In this document: piece by piece, positions 1,362 to 27,047 of the stretch
How positions within the stretch are numbered: the stretch's first letter is position 1
Layout of the letters: each line of letters opens with the position of its first letter
Translations under genes and position numbers: made by a program
The notes under the pieces: model-generated
What the model was told of the DNA's origin: nothing
The model's input: the letters and a program-made list of their open reading frames with translations, nothing else
Databases searched by the model: none
IMG/VR virus record: IMGVR_UViG_3300046808_001241
Coordinates: 1-64,000 of that record
Direction: 5' to 3' (one strand)
DNA: 64,000 nt

Positions 1362-1418
1362 CCACGCGTGGGATTAATGTTGAGCAGTCCAGGCAAGTTG
1401 TTGAAGATTCTTTCTGTT

Positions 1419-2336
1419 ATGCAAGCTATTCAATCGAACAACACCACCAATAAAAACTTCACTCGTGTACGAGACGTTCAAGTTCCAGAGATCTTCTTTC
1501 GGAAGTTCAAGACTGGTATTGAAGATCTGGACGAAGCATTTGGTGGACAAGGATTTCTTCCTGGTTCTGTAATCACTCTTGCTGCTCCGGCTGGTGTTGG
1601 CAAGAGCTCGATTGCTTTGCAACTCCTTCAGTCATTGGAAGATATTGGTAAGAAGACTGCCTACATTTCTGGAGAAGAGACTTTGGAACAAGTTTCGTTT
1701 GCTGCTAAACGGTTGAGAGCTGAGTCTGTTCCTGTTGCCAATCTTGTTTATATTGAAGACATTGAAGAAGCTGTTGTTGAGTACGGCTTTAATTTTATTG
1801 TGTTGGATAGCTTTCCAACGATTGCAACTAAGCGGAAAGGAATGAGCTCCAGGGAGAAAGAAAGCTATGTTATTGGCAAGCTTGTTAATCTCGCAAAAGA
1901 ACGAGAGTGTTGCATGCTTATCATCCAACACTTTACGAAGAGTGGCAAATACAAAGGAGGTACGGAATTGATTCATGCTGCAGATGCTTTGTTCACTCTT
2001 GAGAAAAACCCTGACGATCACAATCTTAGAGATCTGATTTGTCACAAGAATCGTTTCGGTCAGTGCTCGTTCACTACCTTTCCTTTTGGGGCACAAGGAT
2101 ATACTTTCGAAGCCGTTGCTGCAGATAACAATCCAGAGCGCAAGTCTAGTGCAAAGAAAGAATCCAAAGCGGATCTCGTTCTTGACAGTCTTAGTGAACC
2201 AAAGAACGTTGCGCAAATTGTTCAAGAGACAGGCATTTCTGGACCATATCTTAACATGGTTCTTCGGCAGCTTGTTACAGAAGGCAAGATCAACAAAGAT
2301 GGTCGGGGAGCAGATGCACTGTACAAGAAGATCTGA
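1419..2336 (+). CDS. RadA/Sms-like RecA-fold ATPase with probable C-terminal winged helix
   Basis: TGIEDLDEAFGG, Walker A APAGVGKSS, Walker B IVLDS, ELIHAADA, KNRFG; start taken at the ATG after promoter variant 1380. Confidence 0.85.
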   Translation: MQAIQSNNTTNKNFTRVRDVQVPEIFFRKFKTGIEDLDEAFGGQGFLPGSVITLAAPAGVGKSSIALQLLQSLEDIGKKTAYISGEETLEQVSFAAKRLRAESVPVANLVYIEDIEEAVVEYGFNFIVLDSFPTIATKRKGMSSREKESYVIGKLVNLAKERECCMLIIQHFTKSGKYKGGTELIHAADALFTLEKNPDDHNLRDLICHKNRFGQCSFTTFPFGAQGYTFEAVAADNNPERKSSAKKESKADLVLDSLSEPKNVAQIVQETGISGPYLNMVLRQLVTEGKINKDGRGADALYKKI

Positions 2337-19621: not shown

Positions 19622-19891
19622 ATGAATAAACCGAAGATTAGTTTAGGCGGAAAGAACAACCATGGACGCATGAGTGGCGCACGTTCGAGTCGTGCATCTT
19701 CGACCATTTTCAAAAAATTGCAAAAGTTGGATAGAGAAATTTCTTTTCTTAAAGCTCGTTGTAATTTGTCAAATTATTATATTTTAGGAAAAGCATTTAT
19801 AAAAAAGACAGAAGAAAGAATAGAAAAACTTGACTTGAAGAGAAAACAAGTTAGACTTGAAAGAAAGAAATATAAAAATGAAAACAAATAA
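19622..19891 (+). CDS. basic hypothetical protein
   Basis: packed ORF. Confidence 0.55.
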   Translation: MNKPKISLGGKNNHGRMSGARSSRASSTIFKKLQKLDREISFLKARCNLSNYYILGKAFIKKTEERIEKLDLKRKQVRLERKKYKNENK

Positions 19892-23724: not shown

Positions 23725-24336
23725 ATGAAAAAACCAATAACATTTAAACAAGCTGGTATGATCGTAATCGTTCTGCATGTAGCTGGATTTATTGGTTTTA
23801 CTCAATATGCAAGTTATAGAGCAGCCATAGCTAAACAATTGAGAGAGTCTAAAAAGACGGAACTGTTGTCAGAAATTCGTTCACAACAAGATTGGAATAA
23901 CGTCAACATAAAGCCTAGAATTGTTGCAGTAGCGACTCCCAAAAAACCCTCTTCTCCTAGTAATAAGGAAAACCAAAAAGGGGACATGCTACGAACCGTA
24001 CAAAATTTTGCAGTACAAACAACTGACAAAATCAAACAAGAGCTGAAGGAGGTTAACGTCTCTTCAACAAACCAGCAGCAACCAGCTAGAACAAAACCGG
24101 TCACCTCTACTGTTTGGAAGGTAGAAGTAAAACAACCGTCTCCGACACCATCAATAGTTGCTTCGAAGCAACAAGCCCAAAAAAGAAAAATAGATATAGC
24201 CTCGATTAAACAAAATGTAAATAAACTTAAATCTGAAATACAAACCATCAAAACGGTCAGTTTCAGCAACGGACTTGTTACGCAAACTACGGAAGAAATT
24301 CAACAAAGGATGTCTTCTCACATAGTGCTGAGATAA
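23725..24336 (+). CDS. membrane-anchored low-complexity protein
   Basis: N-terminal TM; K/Q/P/S/T-rich. Confidence 0.7.
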   Translation: MKKPITFKQAGMIVIVLHVAGFIGFTQYASYRAAIAKQLRESKKTELLSEIRSQQDWNNVNIKPRIVAVATPKKPSSPSNKENQKGDMLRTVQNFAVQTTDKIKQELKEVNVSSTNQQQPARTKPVTSTVWKVEVKQPSPTPSIVASKQQAQKRKIDIASIKQNVNKLKSEIQTIKTVSFSNGLVTQTTEEIQQRMSSHIVLR

Positions 24337-24344
24337 TTATACTT

Positions 24345-24590
24345 GGGCTAAGCATGAAAACGAGCCGCGACCCGCTGATAAAGGGTGCTTAGTCCTAAGA
24401 CGTCGCGGGTAAACGTCTCATTTGCCAGACCCGATTAGGCAGGGAGTGATAAGTAACCTTCGTCCAGCGTGTTAAAAACACGGTAGCCAATGAAGAGCTT
24501 TCTGGTATAATTACATTTGATCTCTGCCAAAGGCAGGAATCCTACAGAGGCTTGACCGCTGAGCCAGCAATGCGAATTAGCGGTAACGAT
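24345..24590 (+). ncRNA. candidate structured RNA with 5' nested pseudoknot, unassigned
   Basis: GGCTAAGCA/TGCTTAGTC, CCGCGA/TCGCGG and CCC/GGG pairings plus downstream helices; no credible ORF. Confidence 0.5.
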
Positions 24591-24602
24591 CTTTGAAATT
24601 TT

Positions 24603-25036
24603 GGGGGTGTACTGGTTTCGACACATAGTTGAACCTAAGAGTGCATGCAGAGGTTAATCGATGGCCTCTTTAAAAATCGATTAAAAACCTAAACGCAGAA
24701 GACAACACTTCTGACCTCTTAGCTGAGGCCGAATACATCTTCAACAATGCTGACGAGTTCCTCGCCGGCGTTGAAGAGTACGAACTCGCAGCCTAAGAGC
24801 CTAATAGAGGATCCTCTAAATCTATTTTGAAACGTAGAGGAAAAGATAACAGTGTAAGCTTGTAAAAAATTACCACTGAGAAATATATGATCTTCGCATA
24901 TATAGGCAGACACAAAAAGTTAGGCCGATGAGCCACGACAGCCTTTTGTCAATCAAATGTCAAATCCATCCAAGCATGTGAAGAGCTTTTAGCATAAATT
25001 ATTTGGACAGGGGTTCGAATCCCCTCACCTCCACCA
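24603..25036 (+). ncRNA. ssrA: tmRNA
   Basis: 5' GGGGGTGTACTGGTTTCGAC, 3' GGGGTTCGAATCCCCTCACCTCCACCA with G3:U; tag ORF 24695-24796 ending YELAA*. Confidence 0.95.
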
Positions 25037-25053
25037 TAAATATATTAACTAAC

Positions 25054-25141
25054 GGACAGGTGGCAGAGTGGTCGATTGCGCTGGTCTTGAAAACCAGAGG
25101 ACCGAAAGGTTCCGTGGGTTCGAATCCTACCCTGTCCGCCA
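25054..25141 (+). tRNA. tRNA-Ser(TGA)
   Basis: GGACAGG/CCTGTCC, CTTGAAA loop, long variable arm, CCA. Confidence 0.95.
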
Positions 25142-25161
25142 CTTTCTCATTGCGAACGAAA

Positions 25162-25233
25162 GGGGGTGTGGTGCTAATGGTAACACATGGCCTTTGCAAG
25201 GCTGGGTTAAGAGTTCGATTCTCTTCACCTCCA
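25162..25233 (+). tRNA. tRNA-Ala(TGC)
   Basis: GGGGGTG/CACCTCC with G3:U70 (same stem as the tmRNA), TTTGCAA loop. Confidence 0.85.
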
Positions 25234-25405
25234 CGTTCTTACTTTTTCTTTTTATTAGCTCCTTTTTGAGATGATTTAGAACCAGCTTGCTTTGGTTTTT
25301 TCTTTTCTTTACGTTGGGAGTTGTTTCCTTTTGCCATAGTAAAATTACTTATTATTTTTTGTTAATTTTCTTGAATGTCCAAACATTTCGTGTATTATAT
25401 AAAGC

Positions 25406-25672
25406 ATGCAACCGACTATTAAAGATCTACGACGGCAAGGGTACAAGGTACGAGTAATGCACACTCGGGAATATTGGATTAAAGCTAGGGTAACCGGGCA
25501 CTCAAAAGAACTGCATGCAAGAGGAGGTTCTACTAAAATTGAACTAACCACACCCGATAAACAACACACAGTTGCAGGAGAAGCAGTTTGTTCGCTTGAA
25601 GATAACTTTAATAGGAAATTAGGCAATTCAATTGCTCTTGGACGAGCTCTTACAGCGTTAGAACACAAATAA
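25406..25672 (+). CDS. phage hypothetical protein
   Basis: ARGGST...AVCSLEDNFNRKLGNSIALGRA pattern. Confidence 0.75.
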   Translation: MQPTIKDLRRQGYKVRVMHTREYWIKARVTGHSKELHARGGSTKIELTTPDKQHTVAGEAVCSLEDNFNRKLGNSIALGRALTALEHK

Positions 25673-25680
25673 TTTAAAAA

Positions 25681-25767
25681 GCTCGAGTGGCGAAATGGCG
25701 AAACGCAAAGGACTTAAAATCCTTTACATTAGAAACACTGTGGGTTCGAGTCCCACCTCGAGTACCA
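25681..25767 (+). tRNA. tRNA-Leu(TAA)
   Basis: GCTCGAG/CTCGAGT, CTTAAAA loop, variable arm, CCA. Confidence 0.95.
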
Positions 25768-25778
25768 AATTTTAAAAT

Positions 25779-25863
25779 GGGTAGTTCGTATAGCGGCAAT
25801 TACTGAAGACTGTAAATCTTCTGCCTTCGGGCTTCGCAGGTTCGAGTCCTGCACTACCCACCA
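25779..25863 (+). tRNA. tRNA-Tyr(GTA)
   Basis: GGGTAGT/ACTACCC, CTGTAAA loop, CCA. Confidence 0.95.
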
Positions 25864-25873
25864 CTTTCAAAAT

Positions 25874-26041
25874 ATGACACAAAACACAACACAAGAAAAA
25901 GTATTCCAACTCTGTCAGGAATTGGAAGAGATGAAGCAACGCAAAAAGTCGTTCGTTAGGGCTTATAACGAAGAAATCAAGCGTTTGCAAGCAGAGATTA
26001 AAGACCTTATCAATCCCGAAGAAGCAGTTGAACTTCCTTAA
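25874..26041 (+). CDS. small coiled-coil protein (55 aa, not in ORF track)
   Basis: MTQNTTQEKVFQLCQELEEMKQRKK... Confidence 0.6.
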   Translation: MTQNTTQEKVFQLCQELEEMKQRKKSFVRAYNEEIKRLQAEIKDLINPEEAVELP

Positions 26042-26093
26042 TATTCAAAAGAACCGGCTTAGTTAGTTCGATCCCAATTAAGCATATTATTAC

Positions 26094-26360
26094 ATGAAGG
26101 ATCTCATAAGAGAGTCAGCAGGAATATTAATGGCTTTGTGCTTTATGTTCTGTTATGTACCTCAAATAGTCAAAATAGCAAAAACAAAATCTTCAAAAGA
26201 CGTTTCTCTGTCTTTAATCTTTATGTGCATGGGAGGATACACATTTGGTTTGCTTTATATGTTTTTGACGAATTTTGCTTTGTGGATATTTTTAAACTAC
26301 ACTTTTGGGCTTGTCATGTCATCGGTTCTGATATATACTTGCTTTAAATATAAAAAATAG
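26094..26360 (+). CDS. PQ-loop / SemiSWEET-family transporter
   Basis: 88 aa, three TM segments, YVPQIVKIAKTKSSKDVSL signature. Confidence 0.85.
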   Translation: MKDLIRESAGILMALCFMFCYVPQIVKIAKTKSSKDVSLSLIFMCMGGYTFGLLYMFLTNFALWIFLNYTFGLVMSSVLIYTCFKYKK

Positions 26361-26435
26361 ACTTGTAGCTCAGCTAGTCAGAGCACATCATTGATAATGA
26401 TGGGGTCGTTGGTGCAAATCCAACCAGGTCTACCA
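26359..26435 (+). tRNA. tRNA-Ile(GAT)
   Basis: AGACTTG/CAGGTCT, CATCA-TTGATAA-TGATG; atypical T-loop TGCAAAT; CCA. Confidence 0.85.
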
Positions 26436-26438
26436 AAC

Positions 26439-26516
26439 GCTCCTATGGTGTAATTGGTTAACACATCTCCCTTTCACGGAGAAGACTTGCGGGTTCGAGC
26501 CCCGCTGGGAGTGCCA
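26439..26516 (+). tRNA. tRNA-Glu(TTC)
   Basis: TCTCC-CTTTCAC-GGAGA, CCA. Confidence 0.9.
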
Positions 26517-26687
26517 TAAATACTACAAATGAAGGTAGAAAAAATAACACGAATTTACTTGCCTTTCAAAGACCATTTCAAAAAACAAAAAGACGATAAA
26601 AAACAACAACGGAAGAAAAAAACCGTTGAGCAGTCCAAAGAGAAAAAAGATAGTCATTTTATTGGATGGGCATAATTAATTTTATAA

Positions 26688-26759
26688 TGCGGGTTACAAT
26701 TCTGGGAATTGGGATGTCTCATAAGCATCTTCAGGAGGGTTCGATTCCCTCACCCGCTA
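26688..26759 (+). tRNA. tRNA with CAT anticodon (Met or Ile2)
   Basis: GATGT-CTCATAA-GCATC, GAGGG-TTCGATT-CCCTC; mismatched first acceptor pair, short D arm. Confidence 0.75.
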
Positions 26760-26762
26760 TTA

Positions 26763-26837
26763 GCCGGCATAGCTCAGTGGTAGAGCAACGGTTTTGTAAA
26801 CCGTCGGTCCTCGGTTCGAATCCGAGTGTCGGCTCCA
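26763..26837 (+). tRNA. tRNA-Thr(TGT)
   Basis: canonical cloverleaf, TTTGTAA loop, CCA. Confidence 0.95.
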
Positions 26838-26843
26838 TTTTTT

Positions 26844-26918
26844 TGGCGAGTAGCTCAGTGGTAGAGCGGTCGGCTGTTAACCGATTGGTCGTAGGTTCGA
26901 ATCCTACCTCGCCAGCCA
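26844..26918 (+). tRNA. tRNA-Asn(GTT)
   Basis: TGGCGAG/CTCGCCA, CTGTTAA loop, CCA. Confidence 0.95.
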
Positions 26919-26970
26919 TTTTAAGTGGACTTGTCCACTATTTGATAGTATCTTTATTTCACAATAAAAC

Positions 26971-27047
26971 GTACCTGTAGCTCAGTTGGATAGAGCAATA
27001 GCCTTCTAAGCTATTGGTCGCTGGTTCGAGCCCAGCCAGGTACGCCA
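26971..27047 (+). tRNA. tRNA-Arg(TCT)
   Basis: GTACCTG/CAGGTAC, CTTCTAA loop, CCA. Confidence 0.95.

What the first reader, a model, noticed from the sequence alone, without database searches (positions are those of the whole stretch)
24345..24590. Unassigned pseudoknotted RNA upstream of the tmRNA, with HDV-ribozyme-like topology
Seen: a GC-richer non-coding stretch. P1 is GGCTAAGCA (24346-54) / TGCTTAGTC (24386-94), P2 is CCGCGA (24365-70) / TCGCGG (24403-08), and P3 is CCC (24371-73) / GGG (24383-85). The order is P1-P2-P3-loop-P3'-P1'-CCTAAGAC-P2'. Further helices follow (CTCTG 24522 / CAGAG 24545; ACCGCT 24555 / AGCGGT 24579). Established: HDV-like ribozymes have this nested order with a C-U-A-A-G J4/2, and minimal P4-less theta ribozymes flank phage tRNA genes. 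However, loop L3 here (GCTGATAAA) does not match the HDV consensus. Inference: a variant self-cleaving RNA that processes the tmRNA/tRNA transcript, or a new ncRNA class.
Basis: partly seen in the sequence, partly recalled or inferred. Interest (0 to 1): 0.7.

Follow-up and report, generated by a model that had tools for sequence, protein, structure and literature searches.

The report
Modular RNA leader before phage tmRNA
The stretch is not an HDV-like ribozyme but three short, separately folding RNA modules, absent from Rfam, in the leader of a freshwater T4-type jumbo phage's tmRNA/tRNA operon; two of them are better conserved than the tmRNA itself, and their job is unknown.

Summary
In this one sequence, though, they are no more than chance would give (fold z = -1.14; the same nested motif occurs in 2.7% of shuffles and 7% of other tiles of the window).

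Homologues from freshwater phage contigs show what is there: three independent modules.
- A: 24345-24419
- B1: 24424-24506
- B2 plus leader: 24515-24602

The modules are gained, lost, reordered and duplicated in tandem among relatives.

The HDV/theta reading fails on five counts:
- 'P3/L3' is a hypervariable apical hairpin of 13-33 nt.
- Only 3 bp of 'P2' are kept, and without covariation. Its 3' strand lies in the loop of an invariant 7-bp hairpin.
- No P1.1 can form.
- The candidate catalytic C is paired in P1.
- Module A sits 7-10 nt upstream of tRNA 5' ends, not at tRNA 3' ends.

No Rfam family matches any module. B1 and B2 are 95-98% identical between phages whose neighbouring gene is about 69% identical in DNA (56-57% as protein) and whose tmRNA is 79%.

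Best reading: small structured RNA units co-transcribed with the tmRNA/tRNAs and released by processing. Their function is unknown.

The parts
24345..24419 (+). Module A (75 nt). P1 is 24345-54 / 24386-95. The 5'-side internal loop is 24355-70, with the conserved GAGCCG at 24362-67. U24396 is a linker. The conserved hairpin A2 has its stem at 24397-24403 / 24413-19 and its loop CGCGGGUAA at 24404-12.
   Evidence: There are 15 distinct homologous copies. P1 covaries. Covariance model R1 scores the window copy 90 bits, and it is the only copy in the 217-kb genome. A relative lacks 24337-24424, and one contig carries two tandem copies.
24424..24506 (+). Module B1 (83 nt). Closing stem 24424-29 / 24501-06. 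Hairpin 24430-32 / 24442-44 with loop GAUUAGGCA. Stem 24458-63 / 24490-95. Hairpin 24468-71 / 24479-82 with loop UUAAAAA.
   Evidence: 12 distinct copies. 9 of 24 pairs change on both sides, and 95.5% of cells are paired against 33-52% when partners are slid. In L061 and L064 the closing stem has a wholly different but complementary sequence. There it starts 7-8 nt after the -10 of a sigma-70-like promoter.
24515..24602 (+). Module B2 plus leader. Hairpin B2a is 24519-41. A predicted outer helix pairs 24545-51 with 24588-95. Hairpin B2b is 24555-62 / 24577-84 with a conserved 14-nt loop. The single-stranded leader AAAUUUU is 24596-24602 and abuts the tmRNA.
   Evidence: 12 distinct copies. B2b has 3 pairs with compensatory changes; the other helices are invariant. 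In L072 and in an X3 contig, B2 precedes a different sequence. The GATCTTTGAAATT leader is kept even in relatives that lack the modules.
24603..25036 (+). tmRNA gene, followed by a tRNA array at 25054-27047. This is the mature RNA downstream of the leader.
   Evidence: ARAGORN. Rfam RF00023, 125.7 bits.
24484..24511 (+). Sigma-70-like site TAGCCA-16-TATAAT with an upstream TG. It overlaps the 3' strand of the B1 closing stem. It may be an internal promoter giving a B2-tmRNA transcript.
   Evidence: Consensus scan only, 10 of 12 matches. The equivalent place in L061/L064 has no such site, and the bases covary as an RNA helix. Promoter function is not shown.
23725..24336 (+). Upstream ORF of 203 aa with unknown function. 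Its stop codon lies 8 nt before module A.
   Evidence: ORF list. Homologues are 56-57% identical. It serves as the yardstick for how conserved the non-coding modules are.

Best explanation
The 24345-24602 stretch is the structured 5' part of the precursor transcript of a T4-type jumbo phage's stable-RNA operon (tmRNA followed by tRNAs). It is built from three independently folding RNA units of 75-88 nt, here called A, B1 and B2. They behave like extra 'genes' in the tRNA array. Each has its own closing helix. Each can be present, absent, reordered or duplicated in tandem in related phages. Each sits a few nucleotides from its neighbour.

Likely course of events:
- Shown: the units occur in RNA-library contigs joined to the tmRNA 5' part.
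- Shown: in two relatives B1 starts at the predicted start site of a good sigma-70-type promoter.
- Inferred: RNase P cleavage at the 5' end of the tmRNA or tRNA, 7-10 nt downstream of the last helix of B2 or A, releases the units. This is how T4's RNA C and RNA D are made from its tRNA region.
- Inferred: their invariant loops and junctions (GAGCCG and CGCGGGUAA in A; GAUUAGGCA and UUAAAAA in B1; the 14-nt loop of B2b) bind a specific partner, either a protein or another RNA. Sequence conservation there exceeds that of the tmRNA.
- Not established: whether they act in cis on folding, processing or stability of the precursor, or in trans as small RNAs.

They are not HDV-like ribozymes.
For: Modularity:
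- A relative lacks 24337-24424, another skips 24425-24589, and one contig has A-9 nt-A.
- The observed orders are A-B1-B2-tmRNA, B1-B2-tmRNA, B1-A-B2-tmRNA, B1-A-tmRNA, tRNA-A-tRNA, ORF-A, and B2 followed by another sequence.

RNA structure:
- Covariation supports A's P1, all B1 helices and B2b.

Constraint:
- Against L056, B1 is 97.6% identical, B2 96.6% and A 88%. The tmRNA is 79.3% and the neighbouring ORF 69.6% in DNA, or 56% as protein.

Transcription:
- An RNA-library contig of depth 157 spans 24355-24682. The upstream ORF has depth 0 and the tmRNA body more than 1000.
- B1 begins 7-8 nt after the -10 of TTGACT-type promoters in L061 and L064.

Spacing:
- A ends 7-10 nt before tRNA-Ala in five phages.
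- B2's last helix ends 7 nt before the tmRNA.

Precedent:
- The window carries T4-type replication genes.
- T4 makes two small RNAs of unknown role from its tRNA region (PMC3014915; annotation).
Against: - No 5' or 3' ends of the units were mapped. The runs are held only as assembled contigs, so release by processing is inferred, and DNA carry-over in RNA libraries cannot be excluded.
- The A2 stem shows no covariation, which would also suit a DNA-binding site.
- Eight of the 15 A copies were found with an exact A2 pattern, so A2's invariance is partly by construction.
- The sample is small and lineage-restricted: 12-15 distinct copies. Models R1-R3 find nothing in 35 other phage tmRNA loci.
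- No partner or phenotype is known.
- The T4 RNAs are not homologous, so the analogy rests on position only.
Confidence: 0.55

Rival explanations
1. Module A is an HDV-like (theta-type, P4-less) self-cleaving ribozyme that cuts at the 5' end of P1 and so processes the transcript.
For: In the window alone the order P1-P2-P3-loop-P3'-P1'-J-P2' can be drawn, and a C-U-A-A follows P1'. Theta ribozymes do lie in phage tRNA regions (PMC10879173).
Against: - The layout of real theta ribozymes is P1 7 bp, P2 7, P3 3, L3 = U+CC+4 nt, GG forming P1.1, then CUAA directly before P2'.
- Here 'P3/L3' is 13-33 nt of unrelated sequence. P2 keeps 3 bp with no covariation, and its partners stay invariant while positions 24 and 25 vary. 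P2' lies in the loop of an invariant hairpin. The C's after P1' pair with G1 and G2 in all 15 copies. No P1.1 can form.
- A descriptor modelled on the theta layout recovers a true theta ribozyme but none of the 15 copies, even without the P1.1 requirement.
- No HDV-type Rfam hit at E<=10.
- A lies 6 to more than 900 nt after the preceding tRNA, but a constant 7-10 nt before the next one.
Confidence: 0.02
2. Module A, or B1, is a self-cleaving ribozyme of a new class that separates units of the precursor.
For: - The conservation pattern is ribozyme-like: covarying helices, a peripheral hairpin of variable length, invariant junction and loop nucleotides, and a possible loop-bulge pseudoknot CCG/CGG.
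- It occurs as a free-standing unit in varied contexts and in tandem.
- It lies in a phage tRNA region, where small ribozymes are known (PMC10879173).
Against: - No cleavage evidence of any kind. The contig ends seen are explained by assembly branching between variants.
- There is one copy per genome rather than one per tRNA.
- No similarity to twister, pistol, hatchet, hammerhead or HDV models.
Confidence: 0.1
3. The modules are cis-regulatory leader RNAs. They would be ligand- or protein-sensing switches, or polymerase-modifying antitermination elements like HK022 put, controlling how much tmRNA/tRNA the phage makes.
For: - B1 sits at the very 5' end of the transcript in L061 and L064.
- A phage tmRNA linked to a glutamine riboswitch has been reported (PMC9004378).
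- Hairpin A2 is followed by U-rich tails in several copies, clearly so in L081 where it follows an ORF.
- The loops are invariant, as in aptamers.
Against: - The order of the modules and their distance to the regulated gene vary freely.
- A2 is followed by non-U tails in L060 and L070.
- No alternative terminator/antiterminator pairing was found.
- No Rfam riboswitch match.
- A lies inside tRNA arrays, 8 nt from the next tRNA, where termination makes little sense.
Confidence: 0.15
4. The conservation is at the DNA level. The stretch would hold promoter/operator sites or recombination cassettes that shuffle modules, as described for T4-type promoter-stem-loop cassettes (from my own knowledge, not checked here).
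For: - A2 is a perfect 7-bp inverted repeat with a 9-bp spacer that never covaries.
- B1 ends in an extended -10-like TGGTATAAT.
- The modules are reshuffled between phages.
- There is one copy per genome.
Against: - There are many compensatory changes in P1, in the B1 helices (including the bases of the putative -10 region) and in B2b. These preserve RNA pairing, G-U pairs included, rather than a DNA sequence.
- The signal is strand-specific: the plus strand folds better than the minus strand.
- The stretch is present in RNA-library contigs joined to the tmRNA.
Confidence: 0.08

Closest known systems
Theta ribozymes (minimal, P4-less HDV-like ribozymes next to phage tRNA genes; PMC10879173)
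   Same: A short structured RNA in a phage tRNA/tmRNA region. In the window alone a nested P1/P2/P3 order and a CUAA after P1' can be drawn.
   Different: - No P1.1, no fixed 3-bp P3 with a 7-nt L3, and no conserved P2.
- The candidate catalytic C is paired.
- The 3' strand of 'P2' sits in the loop of a conserved hairpin.
- The element is tied to the 5' end of the next tRNA, not to the 3' end of the previous one.
- It comes from freshwater T4-type phages, not gut phages.

T4 RNA C and RNA D (species 1 and 2 RNAs of the T4 tRNA region)
   Same: Small stable RNAs of unknown role, encoded inside the tRNA cluster of a T4-type phage. They lie a few nucleotides from neighbouring tRNAs and are co-transcribed and processed with them.
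   Different: No sequence or structure homology: models R1-R3 give E>0.1 on the T4 region. The T4 RNAs lie at the 3' end of the cluster and are 119-139 nt long. The modules here are 75-88 nt, and in most copies found they lie upstream of the tmRNA or of a tRNA.
Glutamine riboswitch associated with phage tmRNA (OM43 phage Melnitz; PMC9004378)
   Same: A conserved structured RNA physically linked to a phage-encoded tmRNA gene.
   Different: That element is a known Rfam family in the 3' domain of a two-piece tmRNA. Here the tmRNA is one-piece, the elements are 5' of it, and none matches any riboswitch family.
HK022 put RNAs and other promoter-proximal leader RNAs (from my own knowledge)
   Same: Compact two-hairpin RNA elements of about 70 nt lying just downstream of phage promoters and acting as RNA.
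   Different: No homology was tested, because no model is available here. The modules also occur far from promoters, inside tRNA arrays and after ORFs.

Membership tests
HDV-like / theta ribozymes | 7-bp P1 beginning with G at the cleavage site | tested here: inconclusive
   A covarying P1 exists, but it is 10-11 bp. G1-C51 and G2-C50 are invariant pairs, so no 7-bp register starts at the 5' end.
HDV-like / theta ribozymes | 3-bp P3 capped by a conserved L3 of about 7 nt that forms the active site | tested here: not met
   The apical element is 13-33 nt, with stems of 3-12 bp and unrelated loops in the 15 copies.
HDV-like / theta ribozymes | P1.1: two G-C pairs between L3 and the two bases after P1' | tested here: not met
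   The two bases after the G-U pair are CC, and they pair with G1 and G2. L3 has no GG and is not conserved. The descriptor search finds none.
HDV-like / theta ribozymes | P2 helix (5-7 bp) joining the segment after P1 to the 3' end | tested here: not met
   Only CCG/CGG is kept. The 4th pair holds in 8 of 15 copies and the 5th in 3 of 15, with no compensatory change. The 3' strand lies in the loop of hairpin A2.
HDV-like / theta ribozymes | Unpaired catalytic C as the first base of J4/2 (C-N-R-A), directly followed by P2' | tested here: not met
   C-U-R-A is present, but the C is paired in P1, the R and A are in the A2 stem, and 4-5 further paired bases precede 'P2''. The descriptor finds no hits even without the P1.1 requirement.
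HDV-like / theta ribozymes | Cleavage site within about 5 nt of a tRNA 3' end (theta subgroup) | tested here: not met
   The gap to the preceding tRNA is 6, 14, 24, 157 or 920 nt. The gap to the following tRNA-Ala is a constant 7-10 nt.
HDV-like / theta ribozymes | Match to the Rfam covariance models of the HDV clan | tested here: not met
   No such hit at E<=10 on 24250-24680, nor at E<=1 on the six of those eight related loci that carry module A.
HDV-like / theta ribozymes | Mg2+-dependent self-cleavage abolished by a C-to-U change | not testable with these tools
   This needs in vitro transcription. The runs are held as contigs, so no RNA ends could be read.
Any Rfam 15 family (riboswitches, other small ribozymes, RNase P, 6S, SRP, Y-RNA-like, ROOL/GOLLD) | Covariance-model match | tested here: not met
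   Only the tmRNA and tRNAs match in the window. Nothing covers A, B1 or B2 at E<=10 or in related copies.
tRNA / tmRNA or tRNA-like gene | Cloverleaf, or acceptor plus T-arm, detected by ARAGORN or RF00005/RF00023 | tested here: not met
   There is no call inside 24337-24602.
T4 RNA C / RNA D | Sequence or structure homology to T4 rnaC/rnaD | tested here: not met
   R1, R2 and R3 with filters off on T4 69000-75000 give a best E of 0.14, and none of the hits lies on rnaC or rnaD.

The most novel reading that the evidence does not exclude
At least one module is a new class of functional RNA with its own activity. Module A is the best candidate: it has a covarying P1, an invariant GAGCCG bulge facing an invariant CGCGGGUAA hairpin loop, and a peripheral hairpin of free length. 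It could be a new self-cleaving ribozyme, or a new sensor or partner-binding RNA, through which T4-type freshwater jumbo phages control or mature their own tmRNA and tRNAs.
Probability: 0.15. Interest if true: 0.8.

Novelty: new variant of a known kind. Interest (0 to 1): 0.5.

Why it matters
Phage-encoded tmRNAs and tRNA arrays are common in large phages, yet how they are expressed and matured is barely studied. Here the leader of such an operon holds RNA modules under stronger constraint than the tmRNA itself. They shuffle like tRNA genes and match no described family.

If they turn out to be processing, stabilising or regulatory devices, they would explain part of how jumbo phages run their own translation-support RNAs. 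They would also add new RNA families to the catalogue. T4's RNA C and RNA D, from the same kind of location, have had no known role for fifty years, and these modules offer a second, comparative handle on that question.

The case is also a caution. A convincing-looking HDV topology in one sequence was no rarer than chance.

Tried and rejected
- Rfam at gathering thresholds and at E<=10 or E<=1 on the window and on related copies: only tmRNA, tRNAs and an unrelated group I intron.
- blastn against 50,697 phage records: no match.
- The exact 29-mer of A and a degenerate A-core pattern in IMG/VR: 0 hits.
- The two closest IMG/VR relatives by DNA ligase (76-77% identity) carry the tmRNA but none of the modules.
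- 35 IMG/VR loci sharing the tmRNA 5' end: no A, B1 or B2 by blastn or by the covariance models.
- The A2 19-mer in 185,579 prokaryote genomes: 6 hits. One is a real A copy, on a 4.8-kb contig full of tRNAs and probably from a phage. The rest are chance.
- Protein-coding reading: stops in all six frames. The only ORF of 40 aa or more is the 63-aa minus-strand ORF at 24435-24626. It has no family hit and cannot be kept where the modules are reordered.
- RNase P RNA: a few short resemblances seen by eye (UAGGCAGGG, ACAGAGGCUU). Rejected because the covarying helices differ from RNase P pairings, the modules are separable, and there is no Rfam hit.
- Group II intron domain 5, hammerhead and twister resemblances in the window copy (GAGCCG, CUGAUAA, GAUAAAGGG) disappear in the other copies.
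- A trans target for the A2 loop: its complement occurs nowhere else in the window.
- Contig ends in RNA libraries as cleavage sites: rejected. The end at 24355 coincides with a branch between two variants.
- A 60-nt, 75%-identical match to B1 inside coding DNA of L002 was judged uninformative.

Full report
WHAT THE WINDOW IS

The window is the first 64 kb of a 217-kb IMG/VR virus record with direct terminal repeats. Near-identical DNA is held by freshwater metagenomes. It carries T4-type replication genes: a family-B DNA polymerase, a UvsX-like recombinase, an SbcC-like nuclease, a primase and helicases. A one-piece tmRNA gene lies at 24603-25036 and is followed by a tRNA array. The finding covers the 266 nt between the stop of a 203-aa ORF (23725-24336) and the tmRNA. 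This stretch has stops in all six frames, and its GC is 47% against 36% for the window.

CHECK OF THE OBSERVATION

On the single sequence they are not remarkable.
- The minimum-free-energy fold has z = -1.14 against dinucleotide shuffles.
- A nested P1>=9 / P2>=6 / P3>=3 arrangement of the kind described occurs in 54 of 2000 shuffles of the stretch.
- The same arrangement occurs in 34 of 480 other 266-nt tiles of the same window.
- No Rfam family other than tmRNA matches, even at E<=10.

FINDING RELATIVES

The phage collection gave no blastn match. The two nearest IMG/VR relatives by DNA ligase (76-77% identity) have the tmRNA and the short leader GATCTTTGAAATT, but nothing else of the stretch.

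Laying public runs on the region showed that it is modular:
- a DNA contig lacks 24337-24424;
- an RNA-library contig skips 24425-24589;
- one contig has 24345-24420 twice in tandem, 9 nt apart;
- 24516-24601 also occurs in front of a different sequence.

Real sequences came from several routes:
- contigs encoding homologues of the upstream ORF;
- pattern scans of IMG/VR, JGI metagenomes and GTDB genomes;
- confirmation with covariance models built here.

This gave 15 distinct copies of module A (24345-24419), 12 of B1 (24424-24506) and 12 of B2 plus leader (24515-24602).

THE MODULES ARE INDEPENDENT

The arrangements seen are:
- ORF-A-B1-B2-tmRNA (the window's type);
- ORF-B1-B2-tmRNA;
- promoter-B1-A-B2-tmRNA (L061);
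- promoter-B1-A-tmRNA (L064);
- A-tmRNA (an X18 contig);
- tRNA-A-tRNA(Ala) in five phages;
- ORF-A with no tRNA nearby (L081);
- B2 in front of an unidentified GC-rich non-coding stretch (L072).

Every genome checked has one A copy.

CONSTRAINT

Against L056 the upstream ORF is 69.6% identical in DNA (56% as protein) and the tmRNA is 79.3%. A is 88%, B1 97.6% and B2 96.6%.

STRUCTURE

Module A:
Seven of its ten pairs vary, and position 8 shows G-C, A-U, C-G and U-A. Five pairs change on both sides in the tool's count.
- The 5' strand is followed by a bulge of 14-25 nt holding an invariant GCCG within GAGCCG(C/A).
- Next comes an apical hairpin that differs freely, from 13 to 33 nt with unrelated sequences. 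L070 has a whole extra hairpin inserted.
- After the 3' strand of P1 comes one base and then a hairpin, GAGACGU-CGCGGGUAA-ACGUCUC. It is invariant except at its outermost pair.

Module B1 is a three-way junction of 83 nt:
- 9 of its 24 pairs change on both sides. 95.5% of cells are paired, against 33-52% when partners are slid.
- Its closing stem is GCCAGA/UCUGGU in the window and GAUUGGU/ACUAAUC in L061.
- So the extended -10-like TGGTATAAT at 24503-11 is first of all one strand of an RNA helix.

Module B2 has three parts:
- a hairpin at 24519-41;
- a predicted but invariant outer helix, CAGAGGC/GAUCUUUG, that ends 7 nt before the tmRNA.

It can be neither confirmed nor excluded.

WHY IT IS NOT HDV-LIKE

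The supplementary table of the theta-ribozyme paper gives the real layout (PMC10879173): P1 of 7 bp, J1/2 of 2 nt, P2 of 7 bp, P3 of 3 bp, L3 as U+CC+4 nt, P3', P1', GG (forming P1.1 with the CC), L4, then CUAA and P2'. The cleavage site lies within 5 nt of a tRNA 3' end.

Module A differs in these ways:
- The supposed P3/L3 is the hypervariable part.
- The supposed P2 keeps only CCG/CGG. Position 24 is C in 8 copies and A in 7, and position 25 is G, A, U or C, while their partners never change. So there is breakage and no compensation.
- The 3' strand of 'P2' lies in the loop of the invariant hairpin rather than after a P4.
- The two C's after the G-U pair are paired with G1 and G2 in all copies, so they cannot form P1.1 or act as a free catalytic C.
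- A descriptor written from the theta layout recovers a true theta ribozyme but none of the 15 copies, even without P1.1.
- A is 6, 14, 24, 157 or 920 nt from the preceding tRNA, but always 7-10 nt from the following tRNA-Ala.

A three-pair loop-bulge contact remains possible. It cannot be tested, because both sides are invariant.

EVIDENCE THAT THE MODULES ARE RNA

- An RNA-library contig 94% identical to the window, at depth 157, runs from 24355 through B1 and B2 into the tmRNA. Nothing is laid on the upstream ORF in that run, and the tmRNA body reaches depths above 1000.
- In another RNA library an identical contig joins the ORF's 3' half to A and half of B1.
- In L061 and L064, B1 begins 7-8 nt after the -10 of TTGACT-type promoters. 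L068 has an 11/12 promoter 140 nt upstream of B1.
- The runs are held only as contigs, so no molecule ends could be read. The contig end at 24355 is explained by two variants branching there.

BEST READING

The stretch is the 5' part of the precursor of the phage's stable-RNA operon. It is made of three small structured RNA units that behave like additional genes of the tRNA array in spacing, gain and loss, reordering and tandem duplication.

By inference, RNase P cleavage at the 5' end of the tmRNA or tRNA 7-10 nt downstream would free them. Their invariant loops suggest a specific partner. Whether they act in cis (precursor folding, processing, stability, transcription) or in trans is open.

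The nearest precedent is positional. T4 makes RNA C and RNA D from its tRNA region, and their roles are unknown (PMC3014915; annotation). They are not homologous to the modules. A structured RNA linked to a phage tmRNA has also been reported, a glutamine riboswitch in phage Melnitz (PMC9004378).

RIVALS

- A new self-cleaving ribozyme class. The conservation pattern fits, but there is no cleavage evidence.
- A leader attenuator, riboswitch or antitermination element. B1 is promoter-proximal, and A2 is followed by U-rich tails in some copies, notably L081. But the order and spacing of the modules vary, and other tails are not U-rich.
- DNA-level sites. A2 never covaries, and there is a promoter-like -10. 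But the many compensatory and G-U-preserving changes elsewhere argue for RNA.

LIMITS

- The sample is small and comes from one phage lineage.
- Eight A copies were found through an exact A2 pattern, so A2's invariance is partly built in.
- E-values of the home-made models are rough.
- The covariation controls used do not correct fully for phylogeny.
- Function is inferred, not shown.

Noticed in passing
window 19632-19706 (+): ARAGORN calls a 'tRNA-???' with a four-base anticodon (gacg). The Rfam tRNA model does not report it at gathering score. It could be a frameshift-suppressor-like tRNA, a degenerate tRNA or a false call.
   Followed up: no
window 24603-25036 (+): ARAGORN reads the tmRNA tag as 33 aa (AEDNTSDLL...EYELAA), while relatives are read as 23-24 aa starting at EAEYI. 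The resume codon may be miscalled, or the tag really is long.
   Followed up: no
L072 about 1380-1650 (- strand): In this metagenome contig B2 is followed not by a tmRNA but by about 270 nt of GC-rich non-coding sequence starting GGGAAGC. It has no Rfam or ARAGORN hit. It may be another unknown RNA or a very divergent tmRNA.
   Followed up: partly
L071 365-554 (- strand): A group I intron (Rfam RF00028, 57 bits against a gathering score of 50) lies downstream of the tmRNA/tRNA cluster of a close relative of the window's phage. None is reported in the window.
   Followed up: no
L068 4446-4587 and L069 (same region): A further leader of about 140 nt lies between an 11/12 sigma-70-type promoter and B1. 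It is conserved between the two contigs and may be a fourth module.
   Followed up: no
window 24589-24602; L002 2405-2418; L003 6703-6716: The short leader GATCTTTGAAATT(T/A)T abuts the tmRNA 5' end, even in relatives without the modules and in front of a different tmRNA sequence type (L064). L002 has a T4-late-promoter-like TATAAATA 21 nt further upstream.
   Followed up: partly
L002 14475-14534: A 60-nt stretch 75% identical to the 3' half of B1, including CTTTTCTGGTATAATTA, lies where two converging ORFs overlap in a relative that lacks the modules at its tmRNA. It is either chance or a relic.
   Followed up: partly
window 24332-24343 (+): A -10-like GATAAT (24332-37, preceded by TG-A) and a TATACT (24338-43, flagged by the scan with TTCTCA 17 nt upstream) lie just before the first G of module A. 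A may therefore also have its own start site. AT-rich -10-like hexamers precede A in most copies.
   Followed up: partly
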